Source: Lama guanicoe (taxonomy: Eukaryota). From it: a stretch of 64,000 bases of DNA. The notes under the pieces were generated by a model. The model had not been told where the DNA came from and ran no database searches. It was given only the letters and a program-made list of their open reading frames with translations. Shown here in pieces: positions 24,816-64,000 of the stretch (position 1 is the stretch's first letter; each line of letters opens with the position of its first letter). Position numbers and translations under genes: made by a program. The stretch lies in contig MU057069.1 in NCBI GenBank assembly GCA_013239625.1, forward strand, positions 1,546,018 to 1,610,017, read 5' to 3'.

Positions 24816-24949
24816 GAGCTGCACAGGACCTGCCGCGCCATGCAGCGGCGCATCGTGGAGCTCGTCTCCCGCGTGTGCAACGAGGAGGTCACGGAGGAGC
24901 TGCTGCAGGTCAAGGACGACCTCAACAACGTCTTCCTCCGATACGAGAG
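24816..24949 (+). CDS. TOM1L2: TOM1L2 exon 8 (GAT): [20 protein letters not shown]...NNVFLRYE(R)
   Basis: cctag|GAG ... GAGAG|gtgggc; 134 nt. Confidence 0.95.
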
Positions 24950-24969
24950 GTGGGCGGGGCGGGGGCGGG

Positions 24970-25041
24970 NNNNNNNNNNNNNNNNNNNNNNNNNNNNNNN
25001 NNNNNNNNNNNNNNNNNNNNNNNNNNNNNNNNNNNNNNNNN
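24970..25041. other. Assembly gap (72 N)
   Basis: N run after a G-rich tract 20 nt into TOM1L2 intron 8. Confidence 1.
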
Positions 25042-55322: not shown

Positions 55323-56702
55323 GTATTTTTTTGGAGGATCCCCTTTATCACAGAGCTTCCATCTCCGCCGCGGGGTCCCCATCCCCTGTGCCCCTGGGAA
55401 CTCCAAAAAGGAACGGGCCAGTTCCTGAGGGAAGGTGTAACCGCTCCTGGCTCTCAGGGGAGCTGGCGGACCCCTCCCCAGCCTCAGTAGTTACCCCTAC
55501 CTTAACCTCCAGAGTGACGGGGTGGCTTCCCCACATCCTCTGCTCCGCAGGGAAGAGGGCCAGTTGTCCTCTGTCTCCTGGGGCCCCCTTCTGGAGGCGC
55601 ATCCTGGGCTTACCAGACAGACAGCGGGAACCCTGGGTTCCGCCAGTTCTTCTTTCGGAGCCTCAGTCTCTCCATGTGTCAGGGGGGCTCATGAAAACTG
55701 AGCTGAGGGAGGTCCTGCAAGTGGAAATCCTCTATGCCTGTGCTCCCTGCGTGAACCTGGAGGGCCCGCGAAGGGTTTCTATTCAAGGACCCAGCAGGGC
55801 TGAGCCTGGTTCCCCGATCTCATGCTGTTGGGGGCCACAGGAAGGACCCCTCCAGGAACTTTCCTGCCTGGGCACCTGTCAGTGGGAAGGAATCAAGCAA
55901 TGCTGAGTCCCCTGTCCGTGCCACTGCCTGCCCAGCAGCCCTGCCAAGAAGGGTCTAACCTTTTTTGTTGTACAGATGAGGAAACTGAGGACCAGTGAGA
56001 GGGAGCTCCTCATGGCGGGGTGGGCAGAGCCAGAAGCTCAGGCTGGGTCCCGCAGGTTTGCTTACCGGTCCTGCAGGGCACTTTGACCCAGTGAGTGGCT
56101 CCCTCAGTGGGTTAGAGGGCCCCAGGCTGACCCAGTCAGGCTGTGAGTCGCCAGCTGGGGGAGAGGGCCTGTGGCCAGCCTGGGGCTGCAGCAGGGAGCT
56201 TGTCCCAGTCTGTACGAGGAGCAGAGAGTCAGGACAGACAGCATTTGCTTTTGTAGAGAGGAAACCGAAGCCTGAATGGCCGGTCCCGAGGCCACTTGGC
56301 TGCAGACAGGATCTGGGCTTGTGCCCAGAACACACAGGGACACACTGCGTGGCACACATGTGGCCAGCGCCTGGCAGTGCCCCAAGCCTCGGTCTATTCC
56401 ACAGAGAAATGGGTTGGCGAAGGCAGTTGCCGAGTCGGCAGTGGTGGGTCCGGGCCCCAGCTCTGCCTTAGCCTCAGCAATGGGCAAATTGGTAGGCCTC
56501 AGGGGGCCTCCCCTGCCTGGAGCTGACCTTGTCCAGTGCTGCAAGGCTGTCTGAGGCACCAGGCAATGCTCCGGGTGTCACAAGTGCCCAAGCTTGGGCT
56601 CATGATGTTGCTCCCACATGTATCCCTGGGTGGTTGGGGCGAGGGTGGGGTGCAGCTGGGCCACCCTCTTGGCCTCTGCTCACCCAGCTTCTCTCTCCAC
56701 AG

Positions 56703-57134
56703 ACATGCTCCAGCTCATCAACAACCAGGACAGCGACTTCCCAGGCCTGTTCGACCCCCCCTATGCTGGAGGCGGCACAGGGGGCACAGACTCCGCCAGT
56801 CCCGACTCCAGCTCCCTGGGCAGCCTGTCCCCACCTCCTTCCACCATGAGCTCCCCTCTTGAAGGCTTCCTGGTGGGGGCCCAGGCCACACCCCCGCCCT
56901 TGTCCCCTCCCCAGCCTGCACCCGCCCCACTGAAGATGTACCCATCCGGGCCTGCCTTCTCCCCTGGGCCTGGGGTCAAGGAGGAGCCACTACCACTGAG
57001 CATCCTGCAGGCCTCCGCCCCACAGCCCCTGCCCGCGGCCCTCCTGCCCCAGAGCCTTCCAGCCCCAGCCCCACCGCAGTTCAGCTCTGCCCCTGTGCTG
57101 GGCTATCCCAGCCCTCCTGGAGGCTTCTCCACAG
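56703..57134 (+). CDS. SREBF1: SREBF1 exon 2: [18 protein letters not shown]...PPGGFST
   Basis: cacag|AC ... ACAG|gtaagg; 432 nt. Confidence 0.97.
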
Positions 57135-57493
57135 GTAAGGGGGCATGTGGAGGGAGGGGGGCAGCAGGAGCCAGGGAGAAGGGTCTGTGGTGGTCAGTAG
57201 AGGAGCGTGCGGGCCTTAGAACCGGGTCTCTGCCCTGCTGTCTGAGGCGCCCTACTAGGAGTGTGTGCCAGTGCCCGAGTTGCTGGGTGAAGCACTGCCT
57301 CCCACTCTCCTGGGGTGGCGGGGGTGGCTTACACACTTGCATCAGAGCCCCAGGCAGGGGCTGTCCAGATGGGAACCGGAGGCCACAGAGGGCAGTGACT
57401 CACCCAAGGTCCCATGGTGGTAAGGACCCAAGGGGCGGGTTAAAAGCAGGTTAGGGTGGCCGATGTCCGCAGCCCCAGCCTTTACCTCTGCAG

Positions 57494-57681
57494 GGACCCC
57501 TCCAGGGAATACCTCGCAGCCGCTGCCTGGTCCACCGCTGGCTCCCCTTCCGGCGGTCCCGCCTGTCTCCTTGCATACCCAGGTCCAGAGTGCGGCCCCC
57601 CAGCAGATGTTGACAGCCACAGCCACGCCCATGGCGGCTCCAGGAACCACCACGGTGACCTCACAGATCCAGCAGGTCCCG
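57494..57681 (+). CDS. SREBF1: SREBF1 exon 3: GTPPGNTSQ...SQIQQVP
   Basis: tgcag|GG ... CCG|gtgagg; 188 nt. Confidence 0.95.
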
Positions 57682-57766
57682 GTGAGGGGGTCTAGCCAGG
57701 CATCAGGGAGGTGGCAGCCCTGGGCCCAGACCCGAAGCCCACTGCTGAGGCCTCACCCATCCTTAG

Positions 57767-57904
57767 GTCCTGCTGCAGCCTCACTTCATCAAAGCAGACT
57801 CACTGCTCCTGACGACCATGAAAGCAGACGTGGGAGCCTCCGTGAAGGCGGCAGGCATCGGCTCCCTGGCCCCCGGCACAGCCATGCAGGCAGCACCCCT
57901 GCAG
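57767..57904 (+). CDS. SREBF1: SREBF1 exon 4: [16 protein letters not shown]...AAPLQ
   Basis: cttag|GTC ... CAG|gtgggc; 138 nt. Confidence 0.95.
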
Positions 57905-57993
57905 GTGGGCGGCAAGTGGGCGGCCCGGGCAGGGTGGGGGCCTGGGGTCTGCAGGCCTGCATGCCTGCCTGCTAACCGCGTCTGGCCTTGCAG

Positions 57994-58215
57994 ACCCTCG
58001 TGAGCGGTGGAACCATCCTGGCGACAGTGCCGCTGGTAGTGGATACCGACAAGCTGCCCATCAACCGCCTGGCAGCCGGAGGCAAGGCCCAGGGTTTGGC
58101 CCAGAGCCGTGGTGAGAAACGCACAGCGCACAATGCAATTGAGAAGCGCTACCGCTCTTCCATCAACGACAAGATCGCTGAGCTCAAGGACCTGGTGGTG
58201 GGCACAGAGGCCAAG
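57994..58215 (+). CDS. SREBF1: SREBF1 exon 5 (basic region/helix 1): [17 protein letters not shown]...[34 protein letters not shown]
   Basis: tgcag|ACC ... AAG|gtgcgg; 222 nt. Confidence 0.97.
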
Positions 58216-58822
58216 GTGCGGGCGGGGCCCCCCACCTGGCAGCCCTGGAAGGAGGAGAAGGGTGGGCTGAACCAGACAGGCAGGGCCTGCGCCTTCCGAC
58301 TTCTCTGGCCCGGGAGCCCCGTCTGTTCAGCCAGGCTTCGTCAAGGCCCTGTGCACCATGGGCTCTTCTGGGCACTGGGGGTTCAGCGGCAGACACACAG
58401 AAACCCTGCTGTGGCTCCAGGGGGGTGCCAGGGGTGCCAGCAGCCGGGGCGGGTAAACATTAGGGTGTGCCCGCTGGAGGAAGGGAACTGAAGCAGAGTG
58501 AGGGATGGTGAGAGTTGAAAACCTGACTTGGGTGGTCAGGGAAGGCCCCACACGGGTGACATATCACAGGAGGTGAGGTGCGGAGATGGTGGCGAGGAGG
58601 ACAGCAGTTAGCCAGGTGCTGCTGTTTGTGTTTTACCTATTAATCTTCATGCCCTTCCTGGGAGGTAGGTTCCACTAGGGAAGTAACATTCCACGTGGAA
58701 GGAATAGCAGGTGCAAAGGTCCTGAGGCAGCCGTGTTGCAAAACAGCCCTGCCCCTTTTGCTTAGGTGCCCACTTGTCTGCCCTGACTGGCCACCTGTGC
58801 TGTCTCCTTTCTCCTCCTGCAG

Positions 58823-58937
58823 CTGAATAAATCTGCTGTCTTGCGCAAGGCCATCGACTACATCCGCTTCCTGCAGCAGAGCAACCAGAAACTCAAGCAG
58901 GAGAACCTGAGTCTGCGCACTGCTGCCCACAAAAGCA
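58823..58937 (+). CDS. SREBF1: SREBF1 exon 6 (helix 2/zipper): [38 protein letters not shown]
   Basis: tgcag|CTG ... AGCA|gtgagt; 115 nt. Confidence 0.97.
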
Positions 58938-59162
58938 GTGAGTCCCAGCTTCCTTGCTCCCTTGGCTCTGGTCCTGCCTCCGGCCCTGTCCCATCCCTGG
59001 TCTCACCTTAACCTCTGACCCTACGAGGGCCTTTCACCCCTTCTTTGGCCTTCAACTGGCCTTCAGGAGCTAGGCCAACTCCCAACTGCCCCCAGGCCCT
59101 GAGCTCTGATTTGGGGTGTGCTAGAGCATGTAGCTTTTAGCCTGCTCCTTTCTGGTCTACAG

Positions 59163-59383
59163 AATCTCTGAAGGACCTGGTGTCGGCATGTGGCAGTGGA
59201 GGACACGCAGACGTGCCCATGGAGGGCATGAAGCCAGAGGTGGTGGACACTCTGAGCCCACCACCCTCAGACGCCGGCTCACCTTCCCAGAGCAGCCCCG
59301 TGTCCCTTGGCAGCAGGGGCAGTAGCAGTGGTGGCAGTAGCAGTGACTCAGAGCCTGACAGCCCAGTCATTGAGGACAGCCAG
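59163..59383 (+). CDS. SREBF1: SREBF1 exon 7: [13 protein letters not shown]...[11 protein letters not shown]...[13 protein letters not shown]
   Basis: tacag|AA ... CAG|gttggg; 221 nt. Confidence 0.95.
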
Positions 59384-59615
59384 GTTGGGTCCCACAGTGT
59401 TGCCCCCTTCCTGTCACCCCTCGATATCCTCTGGGCCCCAGGACTGGATCAGGCTCCTGACACGTCCCACCTCCCAGTTTATAGACAGAGAAACTGAGGC
59501 CTGGAGCCGTGTGGGGTCCCACAGTAAGGCCAGGTGAAGCGTGATCCCTCCTTCCCTGAGCCGAGCTCTCTGGGCCACTCCAGCCCCGGTCTCACTGCTC
59601 TGCCCACCTCAGCAG

Positions 59616-59817
59616 GTGAAGCCTGAGCAGCCGCCGTCCCCATACAGCCAGGGCATGCTGGACCGCTCCCGCCTGGCCCTGTGTGCCCTCGTCTTCCTCT
59701 GTCTCTCCTGCAACCCCTTGGCCTCCCTGCTGAGCAGCCGGGGACCCCCCGGCCCCTCCGATGCCGCCAGCATCTCCCATGGTCCGAGGCGCAGCACGCT
59801 GGGCGCCGAGGGCAGAG
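59616..59817 (+). CDS. SREBF1: SREBF1 exon 8 (DRSR, TM1, lumenal S1P site)
   Basis: cagcag|GTG ... AGAG|gtagga; 202 nt; [22 protein letters not shown]. Confidence 0.96.
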
Positions 59818-59947
59818 GTAGGACAAGCCAGCTGGGGCGTCGCTGGGAGAAAGGTGGGAAGGGGTCTCGGGATGCAGACCCTAGGCCTGTGGGCTCAGGA
59901 CTCTGGGGTTGCTGGGAGCCATGTCTGCAGCCCCTGTCTGCCCCCAG

Positions 59948-60126
59948 ATGGCCCTGGCTGGGCCCTGTGGCTGCTGCCCCCGCTGGTTTGGCTGGTGAAC
60001 GGGCTGCTGGTGGTGCTCTCCTTGGCACTTCTCTTTGTCTATGGAGAGCCAGTCACGCGGCCCCACTCAGGCCCCTCTGTGCGCTTCTGGAGACACCGCA
60101 AGCAGGCAGACCTGGACCTGGCCCGG
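59948..60126 (+). CDS. SREBF1: SREBF1 exon 9 (TM2): [18 protein letters not shown]...[14 protein letters not shown]
   Basis: cccag|AT ... CGG|gtaagg; 179 nt. Confidence 0.96.
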
Positions 60127-60394
60127 GTAAGGGGCTGCGCCCAGGGGTGGGGGTGGGCGGGGCAGGGACCCCAGGCCGTGTGTCGGGGGGTGCTGGGCCC
60201 AGCATGCATCTGCCCCGTCCACCCATTCTAGTCTACTTCTCTGACCCCCACTGACCCCTGGGGCCCAGCTCACGCTTCCGGGGACACTGGTGTCACAGGG
60301 AGAGCCCCAGGTGGAGTGCTCTTCAGGGCTGGAGGGGTGGCATGTGTGGAGGGGCTCCGGCGCCACCTTTCTAACCCAAGAACCTCATCCCCAG

Positions 60395-60656
60395 GGGGAC
60401 TTTGCCCAGGCTGCCCAGCAGCTGTGGCTGGCCCTGCGGGCTCTCGGCCGGCCCCTGCCCACCTCCCACCTGGACCTGGCCTGCAGCCTGCTCTGGAGCC
60501 TCGTTCGCCACCTGCTGCAGCGTCTCTGGGTGGGCCGCTGGCTGGCCAGCCGGGCCGGGGGCCTGTGGAGAGATGGGGCTCTGCAGGCGGATGCCCGTGC
60601 CAGCGCCCGCGACGCCGCCTTGGTCTACCACAAGCTGCACCAGCTGCACGCCGTGG
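60395..60656 (+). CDS. SREBF1: SREBF1 exon 10: [11 protein letters not shown]...[12 protein letters not shown]
   Basis: cccag|GGG ... GTGG|gtacgc; 262 nt. Confidence 0.96.
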
Positions 60657-60668
60657 GTACGCGGGTGA

Positions 60669-60908
<240 letters not shown>

Positions 60909-61050
60909 TGATGGGTTGGCAGGGACAGGGCCGATGGCTCTCTAGCGAAGAGCTGCTGGGAGAAGCAGTTGGTCCGAGGGAGGGCTGCCCTCCGGCGGGG
61001 GTCTCAGCCCAGGGTTGGTCCTGGTGTGACAGCCCACCCCTCCCCCACAG

Positions 61051-61219
61051 CGCCTCTTCCTGAGGAGTGCCCGCCAGGCCTGCCTGGCACAGAGGGGCTC
61101 GGTGCCGCTTGCCATGCAGTGGCTCTGCCACCCCGTGGGCCACCGTTTCTTCGTGGACGGGGACTGGGCCATGTGCATTGCCCCACGGGACAGCCTGTAC
61201 AGCGTGGCCGGGAACCCAG
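61051..61219 (+). CDS. SREBF1: SREBF1 exon 12: [39 protein letters not shown]...VAGNP
   Basis: cacag|CGC ... CCAG|gtgcct; 169 nt. Confidence 0.95.
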
Positions 61220-61673
61220 GTGCCTTCTCCCCCTCTGCCCCCCTTCCCCTTTCCCTGGCCCCATCCTTCCTCCCCCAGTCCCATTCCTCATGCTCATTCC
61301 TGTCCAGTCCCTGGTCCCCTGCCCCTGCCCACCCTGTCTGTAGCTCTGCCATCTGCTGTTGCCACGGGGGCTGTAGGGATGGGGAGGCCTTCCTGGCTCT
61401 GTCTCAGCTGGGGCTCTTCAGAGGCAAACAGGAAGACAGGGATTTGGGAGCAGGTGGTTGGTCTGGGAGGTGCTCCCGGGCAACATAGCTGTGCAGTGAC
61501 GGGGTCAGGGAAGGGTGTGTGTCCAAGACAAGCTATCCTGTCCGAGGGCAGGGATGGAGTATTAATCCACCAGCTTTCATCTATCTCAGAGCCAAGCCCA
61601 CCCATGCCCAGGAAAGGGCCCAGGAGGGGTAGGGCCCCTTCCCACTGCCCCACTCACCCACTCCTCCCCACAG

Positions 61674-61782
61674 TGGACCCCCTGGCCCAGGTGACTCAGC
61701 TATTTCGTGAACATCTCTTGGAACGAGCACTGAATTGTGTGGCCCAGCCCAGCCCTGGCCCTGGATCGGCTGATGGGGACAG
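61674..61782 (+). CDS. SREBF1: SREBF1 exon 13: [26 protein letters not shown]...DGDR
   Basis: cacag|TG ... ACAG|gtgagc; 109 nt. Confidence 0.95.
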
Positions 61783-62064
61783 GTGAGCGGCCCTGTGTGC
61801 CTCACTAGGCCAGAGGCCCTGACCCTGGCGTCGGGGAAAGGCTCTGTCAGGCACCCGTGTAGGTGGCCAGAGCTGGGCTGCTGTCCACTCACTGTGTGGC
61901 CTCAGGTGCACCCCAGTTCCTCTCTGGGTCTCAGCTTCCCCCTTGGCCCAGCAGCAGGAGACAGCAGCACTTTCTGGAGCCAGGAAGTCAGGTTGTGCTG
62001 TGGGGGTAGGTGAGGAGGGCCAGTGCCCCTTCAGGACACTGCCACCTGTCCTCTCCTGCCACAG

Positions 62065-62177
62065 GGAGTTCTCAGATGCCCTCGGGTATCTGCAGCTGTT
62101 GAACAGCTGCTCCGATGCAGCTGAGGCCCCTTCCTGCAGCTTCTCCGTCAGCTCCAGCATGCCCGCCACCACCACCG
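62065..62177 (+). CDS. SREBF1: SREBF1 exon 14: [19 protein letters not shown]...MPATTT
   Basis: cacag|G ... ACCG|gtgagc; 113 nt. Confidence 0.95.
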
Positions 62178-62276
62178 GTGAGCCCCCAGCACCCCCAGCC
62201 CCAGCTCCACAGCCGCTTGGCCTCGGGTGCTCTGTGGCCGAGTCTCAGGGACCCCTCCCACCCCCTGTCCCTGCAG

Positions 62277-62409
62277 GCACAGACCCAGTGGCCAAGTGGT
62301 GGGCCTCACTGACAGCTGTGGTGACCCACTGGCTGCGGCGGGATGCAGAGGCGGCCGAGCGGCTGTACCCGCTGGTGGAGCACCTGCCCCGCGCCCTGCA
62401 GGAGTCCGA
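62277..62409 (+). CDS. SREBF1: SREBF1 exon 15: [22 protein letters not shown]...LQES
   Basis: tgcag|GC ... CCGA|gtgagt; 133 nt. Confidence 0.95.
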
Positions 62410-62556
62410 GTGAGTGTGCCGCCCCTGCCAGTCTTTGTTGGGTGTGGTTGGGGTCCCCGCCATTTTCTTCCCACGAAGCCACAACGAGGACAAAGGCAGC
62501 TTAGTGAGGGCTGGAGACCTGGTCTGACCACCACACCTCTGCCTTGGCCCCAACAG

Positions 62557-62722
62557 GAGACCCCTGCCCAGGGCGGCTCTGCATTCCTTCAAGGCTGCCC
62601 GGGCCCTCCTGGGCCGCGGGAAGGTGGAGTCTGGCCCAGCCAGCCTGGCCATGTGTGAGAAGGCCAGTGGCTACCTGCAGGACAGCCTGGCTGCCACACC
62701 AGCCGGCAGCTCCATTGACAAG
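62557..62722 (+). CDS. SREBF1: SREBF1 exon 16: [15 protein letters not shown]...[12 protein letters not shown]...SSIDK
   Basis: aacag|G ... AAG|gtgagg; 166 nt. Confidence 0.95.
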
Positions 62723-62949
62723 GTGAGGGGTGGGGCTGGGGGCCTGGCTGGTCGTTCCCCTTGGGCTGCAGACTGCAGGGTCAGCCCAACAGCACAGAAT
62801 GGGGAACCCAGCTGACCTCGCTTGCTGGCTAAGGTTCGAGCCCAGGGGGGAGCAGGTGCCCCTACCCTGGTGGGGTCGGGATGAGCGCAGTGGCAGGGCC
62901 CTCCTTGGAGGCTGCTCCCTAGGCAGGTGGGGGCGTGGGGGCCTGGAGA

Positions 62950-63043
62950 GCGGGCGGCCCCGCGGTGCATTGCTGTTGCATTGCACGTGTGAGGCGGGTG
63001 CAGTGCCTCGGCAGTGCAGCCCGGGGCCGGCCCCTGGCACCGC
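62950..63043 (+). ncRNA. MIR33B: pre-miR-33b (5p 62965-62984; 3p 63001-63022) in SREBF1 intron 16
   Basis: GTGCATTGCTGTTGCATTGC and CAGTGCCTCGGCAGTGCAGCCC arms form a hairpin at the known intronic position. Confidence 0.97.
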
Positions 63044-63111
63044 GGGCCCCCACTCTTCCCTCCCTGAGCTGGAGCCCCTGACCCCTGCCCTGCCCTGCCT
63101 GTCACCCCCAG

Positions 63112-63312
63112 GCCATGCAGCTGCTCCTGTGTGACCTGCTCCTTGTGGCGCGCACCAGCCTGTGGCAGAGGCAGAAGCCACCTACACCTGCCCAGGCCTC
63201 GCAGGGCCCGGGCGGTGGGGCCCAGGCCTCTGCCCTTGAGCTGCATGGCTTCCAGCGGGACCTGAGCAGCCTGAGGCGCCTGGCGCAGAGCTTCCGGCCT
63301 GCCATGCGGAGG
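63112..63312 (+). CDS. SREBF1: SREBF1 exon 17: [18 protein letters not shown]...FRPAMRR
   Basis: cccag|GCC ... AGG|gtgagt; 201 nt. Confidence 0.96.
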
Positions 63313-63407
63313 GTGAGTGCCTGGGCCCCTGGGCTTGCAGTGGGGACTAGAGGCGAGAGGCAGGAGTGGGGGCCTGGCCAGAACCTCACCTGGCTCCTCC
63401 TGCCCAG

Positions 63408-63519
63408 GTGTTCCTACACGAGGCCACGGCCCGACTGATGGCAGGGGCCAGCCCCGCGCGGACACACCAGCTGCTGGACCGCAGTCTGAGGAGGAGGACA
63501 GGCCCCTGCAGCAAAGGAG
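63408..63519 (+). CDS. SREBF1: SREBF1 exon 18: [37 protein letters not shown]
   Basis: cccag|GTG ... GGAG|gtgaga; 112 nt. Confidence 0.96.
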
Positions 63520-63749
63520 GTGAGAAGGGCCGACCACCTAGGCGGGGAGGGCCCCAGGCCACTTGAAGGCTGCAGACACTTGAAGGCTGTGTAAGACAGA
63601 CGGGGACGGAGGGATGGGACGGCTCACCGGAGACCACTGACCTTAGTGGACACGCGACTGTGCGCTCGGGTCTCAGTCTGTGCTCTGCTGGGGGGCGGGA
63701 GGGGTCAGGCTGACGGGGGCGGGGCCGGGCCAAGCCCCACCCCGACACA

Positions 63750-64000
63750 GCCTCAGGTGCACCCCAGTTCCTCTCTGGGTCTCAGCTTCCCCCTTGGCCC
63801 AGCAGCAGGAGACAGCAGCACTTTCTGGAGCCAGGAAGTCAGGTTGTGCTGTGGGGGTAGGTGAGGAGGGCCAGTGCCCCTTCAGGACACTGCCACCTGT
63901 CCTCTCCTGCCACAGGGAGTTCTCAGATGCCCTCGGGTATCTGCAGCTGTTGAACAGCTGCTCCGATGCAGCTGAGGCCCCTTCCTGCAGCTTCTCCGTC
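63750..64000 (+). repeat. SREBF1: Exact direct copy of 61899-62149 (3' part of intron 13 plus exon 14 copy from 63916), running off the window
   Basis: 251 nt with no mismatch by eye; offset 1851. Confidence 0.95.

What the first reader, a model, noticed from the sequence alone, without database searches (positions are those of the whole stretch)
61899..64000. Apparent 1851-bp tandem duplication of SREBF1 exons 14-18 that would duplicate miR-33b
Seen: where exon 19 is expected, the sequence at 63750 restarts at intron 13 position 61899 and is identical for all 251 remaining bases. No N-gap lies at the junction (...cccgacaca|gcctcaggtgca). Inference: if the copy continues, the unit carries exons 14-18 and a second miR-33b hairpin near 64801. 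Exons 14-18 sum to 725 nt, which is not a multiple of 3. Exon 18 spliced to the exon 14 copy reads [12 protein letters not shown] (TGA 63951-53), deleting the extreme C-terminus or triggering NMD. A real allele would raise miR-33b dosage while uncoupling it from SREBP-1 protein. Perfect identity in a gapped assembly makes a scaffolding or haplotype artefact at least as likely.
Basis: partly seen in the sequence, partly recalled or inferred. Interest (0 to 1): 0.8.

Follow-up and report, generated by a model that had tools for sequence, protein, structure and literature searches.

The report
Probable false duplication in SREBF1
The last 251 bases of the window do repeat, letter for letter, a stretch 1851 bases upstream inside the alpaca/llama-type SREBF1 gene, but indirect evidence points to an assembly error rather than a real duplication of five exons and miR-33b, and the read test that would settle it could not be run.

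Summary
Observation confirmed. Window 63750-64000 equals 61899-62149 exactly (251/251, spacing 1851), with no N at the join. It is the only such repeat in the 64 kb. The unit would carry SREBF1 exons 14-18 (113+133+166+201+112 = 725 nt) and the mir-33 hairpin (62960-63024, Rfam 70.2 bits). Exon 18 joined to the exon-14 copy would read ...[14 protein letters not shown] (TGA 63951-53).

The host is a New World camelid: exons 14-18 are 100% identical to alpaca SREBP-1.

A metagenome scan found nothing.

Indirect evidence favours an assembly artefact, about 0.7:
- All six current alpaca RefSeq isoforms go from exon 18 to a normal exon 19.
- An older alpaca RefSeq protein ends by reading from exon 18 into this same intron, as if exon 19 could not be reached there. 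That suggests intron 18 is hard to assemble.
- The join follows a 74% GC stretch with G-runs.
- None of 14 DNA runs holds all sampled words.
- A real allele would frameshift a key gene.

A real, very recent duplication stays possible, about 0.2. The scan has noted many similar tandem duplications in this genome; none has been checked.

The parts
61899..62149 (+). Copy 1 of the exact 251-nt repeat. It starts in intron 13 and runs into exon 14.
   Evidence: 100% identity to 63750-64000
63750..64000 (+). Copy 2 of the repeat, cut off by the end of the window. It holds the 3' part of intron 13 and the first 85 nt of an exon-14 copy (63916-64000).
61899..63749 (+). Putative 1851-nt duplication unit (3' part of intron 13, exons 14-18, first 230 nt of intron 18). 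Only its first 251 nt are seen twice.
   Evidence: spacing 1851; exon map
63749..63750 (.). Join ...CCCCGACACA|GCCTCAGGTG... There is no N and no microhomology on the left side. The 100 nt before it are 74% GC and contain G-runs.
61673..61783 (+). SREBF1 exon 13, 3' part as matched (alpaca residues 797-833).
   Evidence: 100% identity
62065..62177 (+). SREBF1 exon 14 (113 nt).
   Evidence: peptide identical to alpaca XP_072794658.1
62277..62409 (+). SREBF1 exon 15 (133 nt).
62557..62722 (+). SREBF1 exon 16 (166 nt).
62960..63024 (+). mir-33 (miR-33b) precursor hairpin, in the intron between exons 16 and 17.
   Evidence: RF00667, 70.2 bits, E 1.6e-14, full model 1-69
63112..63312 (+). SREBF1 exon 17 (201 nt).
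63408..63519 (+). SREBF1 exon 18 (112 nt). Its last base is the first base of a split codon.
63564..63566 (+). TGA that ends the read-through of exon 18 into intron 18. The resulting tail ...[16 protein letters not shown] is exactly the C-terminus of the older alpaca RefSeq protein XP_015103074.1.
63951..63953 (+). TGA reached if exon 18 were spliced to the exon-14 copy (tail [12 protein letters not shown]).
   Evidence: The split codon G+GG was read by eye.

Best explanation
The repeat is most likely a false duplication made by the assembler, not part of the animal's genome.

The window comes from a draft, gapped assembly of a New World camelid (alpaca/llama type). A contig probably ended about 230 nt into the GC-rich intron 18 of SREBF1. 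I see two ways the error could then arise:
- The next piece overlapped the contig by about 1.85 kb, either as a second contig of the same region or as the other haplotype, and was butted on without merging.
- A gap-filling or extension step followed a chimeric read back to intron 13.

Either way the sequence restarts at 61899 with perfect identity and no N.

On this reading the animal has one copy of exons 14-18 and one miR-33b. Exon 18 splices to a normal exon 19, which lies beyond the window. There is then no change in miR-33b dosage and no truncated SREBP-1.

Shown: the exact repeat, its anatomy and the species group. Inferred: that the join is unsupported by reads.
For: (1) Every current alpaca RefSeq SREBP-1 isoform (X1-X6) runs from exon 18 into a normal exon 19 (...CSKGGAAAELEPRPTRREH...TVTSS). 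All six come from a 63.3-Mb chromosome, and five are identical to the window over exons 14-18. None carries the predicted [11 protein letters not shown] tail.

(2) The older alpaca RefSeq protein XP_015103074.1 (1074 aa) ends ...[21 protein letters not shown]. That is exon 18 read straight into intron 18, up to the TGA at window 63564-66. The annotators of that older build apparently had no exon 19 to splice to. An independent camelid build therefore also seems to fail within this same intron, as expected for a stretch that assemblers cannot cross.

(3) The 100 nt before the join are 74% GC and contain G-runs. Short-read coverage typically drops in such sequence and contigs end there.

(4) The join has no microhomology and the copies are 100% identical. 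This fits an unmerged overlap, although it does not exclude a fresh real duplication.

(5) Fourteen DNA runs, from 7 studies and 4 organism labels, hold 0.96-0.99 of the sampled 31-mers of 58001-64000. None holds all of them. The roughly 30 junction-spanning words would make about 0.5% of the sample. This is weak evidence.

(6) Published base rates. False duplications were among the most common errors in vertebrate assemblies. They are often at contig boundaries and are easily mistaken for exon duplications (PMC8081667). In older assemblies they touched 4-24% of coding genes. The copies are usually separated by a gap but are sometimes joined by read-unsupported sequence from wrong gap filling (PMC9516828). 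Published llama, guanaco, vicuna and alpaca assemblies are short-read or hybrid, scaffold-level builds with contig N50 of 36-92 kb, and alpaca chr16 is described as fragmented (PMC7331169; PMC6598621).

(7) Biology, from established knowledge. Including a 725-nt unit would frameshift SREBP-1 before the last 76 residues of its C-terminal regulatory domain, which needs to bind SCAP. A fixed allele would disable a key lipid regulator.
Against: No direct test was possible: no reads were laid on the join and no other assembly's DNA was seen. There is no N run at the join, whereas most published false duplications flank a gap. Perfect identity and sharp breakpoints also fit a very young real tandem duplication. 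The RefSeq protein evidence comes from other animals or builds; the window differs from both annotated alpaca proteins at residue 484. It therefore says nothing about a private or heterozygous allele in the sequenced animal. Normal gene models could also be drawn on a genome that really carries the duplication.
Confidence: 0.72

Rival explanations
1. A real, very recent 1851-bp tandem duplication of SREBF1 exons 14-18 plus miR-33b in the sequenced animal, most likely heterozygous or private. The duplicated allele would give a second intronic miR-33b per transcript. Its mRNA would be frameshifted, with the stop 12 codons into the exon-14 copy, and would be a target for nonsense-mediated decay or would lack the last 76 residues.
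For: The repeat is exact, in direct orientation, with clean breakpoints inside introns and no N at the join. It is the only such repeat in this 64-kb window, so the window itself shows no general assembly noise. Splice sites of the exon-14 copy are intact. Most documented false duplications flank gaps, and this one does not.
Against: No read, transcript or protein supports the join. All current alpaca isoforms are normal. The older alpaca model stops in the same intron, which points to trouble in assembly rather than biology. The allele would be a loss-of-function allele of a key gene. The prior for real, 100%-identical, exon-bearing tandem duplications is far below that for false duplications in draft assemblies.
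Confidence: 0.2
2. A duplication that is real and fixed in New World camelids, tolerated because splicing skips one copy.
For: DNA runs under four organism labels hold 96-99% of the words of the stretch. The locus as a whole is therefore shared, and a shared join is not excluded by that number.
Against: A fixed duplication old enough to be shared among species should have gathered differences, yet 251/251 bases are identical. Five intact duplicated exons would be expected in at least some annotated isoforms, but none of seven alpaca proteins shows them. No run holds all words.
Confidence: 0.03
3. The repeat is only a short spurious tail: a mis-extension at the end of a scaffold or at a filled gap, for example from a chimeric mate-pair read whose circularised ends mimic a tandem join. 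On this reading the second copy stops soon after 64000 and there is no second miR-33b even in the assembly. This is a sub-case of the artefact reading and is counted inside its 0.72.
For: Only 251 nt of the copy are visible. The 1851-nt offset is close to the 2-kb mate-pair libraries used for published llama, guanaco, vicuna and alpaca assemblies. The older alpaca model ends in this intron.
Against: Which assembly the window comes from is unknown. Nothing beyond 64000 could be read.
Confidence: 0.25

Closest known systems
False (homotype or heterotype) duplications in vertebrate draft assemblies (Rhie et al. 2021, PMC8081667; Ko et al. 2022, PMC9516828)
   Same: A near-perfect local duplicate beside its source, in a gapped draft assembly, inside a gene, mimicking an exon duplication. 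It sits where a contig would be expected to end (GC-rich intron).
   Different: No N gap separates the copies. Read depth, read-pair discordance and k-mer multiplicity, the features that define the class, could not be measured here.
Real intragenic tandem duplications (copy-number variants that duplicate internal exons and shift the frame)
   Same: Direct orientation, breakpoints in introns, a unit not divisible by three, and a predicted premature stop.
   Different: No junction-spanning read or transcript is known. The copies show no difference at all, and only the first 251 nt of the second copy are seen.
The SREBF1 / miR-33b host-gene arrangement (PMC4058878; pig: PMC3929038)
   Same: A mir-33 hairpin on the sense strand of an SREBF1 intron. 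Here it lies between exons 16 and 17, as reported for pig intron 16.
   Different: Nothing unusual in the first, certain copy. A second hairpin is only an extrapolation beyond the window.

Membership tests
SREBF1 (sterol regulatory element-binding protein 1 gene) | Exon translations match SREBP-1 orthologues in order and frame | tested here: met
   Exons 14-18 are 100% identical to alpaca XP_072794658.1. A local tblastn places residues 31-1074 in order at 56702-63519. Homologues are named SREBP-1 and carry PF00010.
mir-33 precursor family (Rfam RF00667) | Covariance-model score above the curated gathering score over the full model | tested here: met
   70.2 bits against 50, model positions 1-69 of 69, at 62960-63024 on the + strand.
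False assembly duplication | Half or very low read depth over both copies | not testable with these tools
False assembly duplication | Assembly gap (N) between the copies | tested here: not met
   There is no N at 63749/63750. The only N run is 24970-25041. The literature also allows a read-depth gap from wrong gap filling in place of an N gap; that was not testable.
False assembly duplication | Duplication absent from other, better assemblies of the species | not testable with these tools
The only indirect evidence is that alpaca RefSeq proteins from a chromosome-level build have a normal exon 18 to exon 19 join.
Real tandem duplication (CNV) | Reads or read pairs spanning the novel join; raised depth over the unit | not testable with these tools
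   The Logan word shares (0.96-0.99, never 1.00) are too coarse to decide.
Real tandem duplication (CNV) | Expression of the novel exon 18 to exon 14 junction | tested here: inconclusive
   No alpaca protein record carries the predicted tail.

The most novel reading that the evidence does not exclude
The duplication is real in the sequenced New World camelid. One SREBF1 allele would carry exons 14-18 and miR-33b twice. Each primary transcript would then yield two miR-33b hairpins while its mRNA is frameshifted and degraded or encodes an SREBP-1 lacking the end of its SCAP-binding domain. That would be a natural uncoupling of an intronic miRNA from its host protein.
Probability: 0.2. Interest if true: 0.55.

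Novelty: not a real feature. Interest (0 to 1): 0.15.

Why it matters
If real, the allele would be a rare natural experiment: miR-33b dose would rise while SREBP-1 output from the same allele falls, in a species group with unusual lipid metabolism. More probably it is an assembly error. In that case it matters in practice: this SREBF1 locus would mislead gene annotation (a truncated or frameshifted SREBP-1, a spurious second MIR33B) and any count of gene or miRNA copies. The scan's other, unchecked notes of near-identical tandem duplications in GC-rich genes of this genome should be tested together before any is read as biology.

Tried and rejected
The local tblastn used the two pieces either side of them. 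One search was a self-repeat scan inside the window, not a database search.

(2) The look-up of encoding contigs, meant to fetch the alpaca chromosome around XP_072794658.1, was closed.

(3) An exact look-up of ten window ORFs, including the one across the join, found none in the collection. This says little, because GTG/TTG starts translate as V/L by reference but as M in called genes.

(4) A word search with the exon 14-intron 14-exon 15 ORF found only ORFs of other mammals at 70% identity or less, and no camelid genomic ORFs. A third costly search for ORFs near the join was therefore not run.

(5) A metagenome scan for the 28-mer left of the join (63722-63749) gave 0 hits. A second scan was judged pointless.

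(6) Findings look-ups by place, words and sequence gave no note on the next window and no read-checked duplication.

(7) Homology to the left of the two breakpoints: none.

(8) A Camelus protein of 1209 aa was checked for duplicated exons. It only uses an upstream acceptor of exon 14, adding 10 aa.

Exons were handled one by one by reference, and the exon 18 / exon 14-copy codon was read by eye.

Human SREBP-1 proteins appeared in the hit list and were not followed up. No contig that I take for human was fetched.

Full report
**1. The observation**

The last 251 bases of the window (63750-64000) are identical to 61899-62149, with a start-to-start spacing of 1851.
- The identity stops sharply on the left: G at 61898 against A at 63749.
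- The 120 bases before each copy align no better than GC-rich DNA does by chance.
- No N lies at the join. The window's only N run is 24970-25041.
- It is the only direct repeat of 80 nt or more within 10 kb in the whole 64 kb. TRF finds no array.

What is actually seen is 251 nt of a second copy. The rest of an 1851-nt unit is an extrapolation beyond the window.

**2. What the sequence is**

Rfam places a full-length mir-33 precursor at 62960-63024 on the + strand (70.2 bits, gathering score 50).

The stop-free stretches around it translate to SREBP-1. A profile-free HMMER search with the contiguous exon 14-intron 14-exon 15 stretch returned SREBP-1 relatives. A word search seeded with one of them listed SREBP-1 of many mammals.

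The peptides of exons 14-18 are 100% identical to alpaca (Vicugna pacos) SREBP-1 XP_072794658.1. They differ at three residues from dromedary and Bactrian camel.

The exons, read from AG/GT sites, are:

| Exon | Coordinates | Length (nt) |
|---|---|---|
| e14 | 62065-62177 | 113 |
| e15 | 62277-62409 | 133 |
| e16 | 62557-62722 | 166 |
| e17 | 63112-63312 | 201 |
| e18 | 63408-63519 | 112 |

They sum to 725 nt. The left breakpoint lies 115 nt into intron 13. The right breakpoint lies 230 nt into intron 18. The hairpin sits between exons 16 and 17, as reported for pig (PMC3929038). TOM1L2 exons lie upstream, the expected neighbour.

The window is not either annotated alpaca build. It encodes L at residue 484, where both alpaca proteins have P. 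At residues 102 and 180 it agrees with the older alpaca protein, not the newer one. So it is a New World camelid assembly of another animal, species or allele.

**3.

This is correct as arithmetic. Exon 18 ends with one base of a split codon. That base plus GG from the exon-14 copy (which starts at 63916) gives G. The contiguous reference 63918-63953 then reads [11 protein letters not shown]. I did not build or search a joined sequence.

**4. Direct tests that failed**

- Fourteen DNA runs under four organism labels hold 0.96-0.99 of the sampled 31-mers of 58001-64000. RNA runs hold 0.24-0.39.
The cap then barred a second call beside those places.
- Exact ORF look-ups, an ORF word search and a metagenome scan for the 28-mer left of the join gave nothing from camelids.
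- No note of the scan covers the next window.

So neither 'reads span the join' nor 'other assemblies lack it' could be checked.

**5. Indirect evidence**

(a) The cluster of alpaca SREBP-1 proteins has seven members. The six current isoforms, from a 63.3-Mb chromosome, all pass from exon 18 into a normal exon 19 (...CSKGGAAAELEPRPTRREH...TVTSS). None has the predicted tail.

(b) The seventh member is the older XP_015103074.1 (1074 aa). It ends ...[21 protein letters not shown]. That is exactly exon 18 read through into intron 18, up to the TGA at 63564-66 of the window.
- A gene model ends that way when no exon 19 is within reach.
- So an independent, older camelid build also seems to break down inside this intron.
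- This is an inference from the protein. I could not see that build's DNA.

(c) The 100 nt before the join are 74% GC with G-runs. Contigs from short reads tend to end in such sequence.

(d) No run holds all sampled words. Junction words would be about 0.5% of them. This is weak.

(e) Base rates from the literature.
- False duplications were among the commonest assembly errors. They often sit at contig boundaries and are easily misread as exon duplications (PMC8081667).
- In older assemblies they touched 4-24% of coding genes. The copies are mostly separated by a gap but are sometimes joined by read-unsupported sequence from wrong gap filling (PMC9516828).
- Published llama, guanaco and vicuna genomes are SOAPdenovo short-read builds with 2-40 kb mate pairs (PMC7331169).
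- Alpaca VicPac3.1 is a hybrid meta-assembly with contig N50 of 36 kb and a fragmented chr16 (PMC6598621).

(f) From established knowledge: the C-terminal regulatory domain of SREBP-1 binds SCAP, and Srebf1 loss is severe in mice. A fixed frameshifting duplication is therefore unlikely, though a heterozygous one is possible.

**6. Against the artefact reading**

- There is no N at the join.
- The window shows no other such repeat.
- Clean intronic breakpoints with perfect identity are also what a brand-new real duplication looks like.
- The protein evidence comes from other animals or builds.

**7. Leads, not evidence**

First-stage notes on this same genome list more than a dozen near-identical tandem duplications of 0.1-6.4 kb in GC-rich genes: NHERF1, LAMA5, SKI, SEC16A, F7, CELSR1, PSD, RASA3, RNPEPL1 and FAM53B. 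None was checked with reads. I do not count them as support, but they call for one genome-wide test.

Earlier follow-up agents also called this an alpaca/llama-type camelid. My protein comparison confirms that independently.

**8. Verdict**

| Reading | Estimated probability |
|---|---|
| Assembly artefact (unmerged contig or haplotype overlap, or a wrong gap-fill or extension at a contig end in GC-rich intron 18) | about 0.72 |
| Real, young, probably heterozygous or private tandem duplication | about 0.20 |
| Fixed camelid duplication | about 0.03 |
| Other | remainder |

The first copy of the locus is an ordinary SREBF1 3' half with its ordinary miR-33b. Interest is low unless reads prove the join.

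- No N was filled.
- No letters of 58698-58733 were sent to a search tool.
- No contig taken for human was fetched. Human proteins listed were not pursued.

Noticed in passing
window 62178-62276: Intron 14 of SREBF1 is 99 nt, stop-free and in frame. Alpaca RefSeq isoform X5 (1182 aa) retains exactly this stretch ([33 protein letters not shown]). Many Logan ORF calls of other mammals also read through it.
   Followed up: partly
window 59610-59816 (residue 484); 56702-57136 (residue 102); about 57500 (residue 180): The window encodes L484 (GMLDRSRL), as camels do, while both annotated alpaca proteins have P484. At residues 102 and 180 the window agrees with the older alpaca protein (P, N), not the newer one (T, S). 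The window therefore comes from another animal, species or allele than the annotated alpaca builds.
   Followed up: partly
window 63408-63566: The older alpaca RefSeq protein XP_015103074.1 ends with a read-through of exon 18 into intron 18 and also lacks 15 residues ([15 protein letters not shown]) inside the exon at 60392-60658. It looks like an annotation casualty of an incomplete locus.
   Followed up: partly
window 24840-25041: A TOM1L2 exon (…[35 protein letters not shown]) ends just before the window's only N run (24970-25041, 72 N).
   Followed up: no
window 61880-61950: The left breakpoint lies in a stretch that resembles the core of an old MIR SINE (…CTGTGTGGCCTCAGG…CTCTCTGGGTCTCAGCTTCCCC…). 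This is a recollection and was not tested with a repeat library.
   Followed up: no
They lie in the conserved bHLH-coding part of SREBF1. I worked beside them afterwards.
   Followed up: no
same genome, other pieces (notes s1-861130, s1-856788, s1-859301, s1-859289, s1-858914, s1-859702 and others): First-stage notes list many near-identical tandem duplications of 0.1-6.4 kb in GC-rich genes of this assembly. None was checked with reads. A genome-wide census with depth would tell whether they are a systematic assembly error.
   Followed up: no
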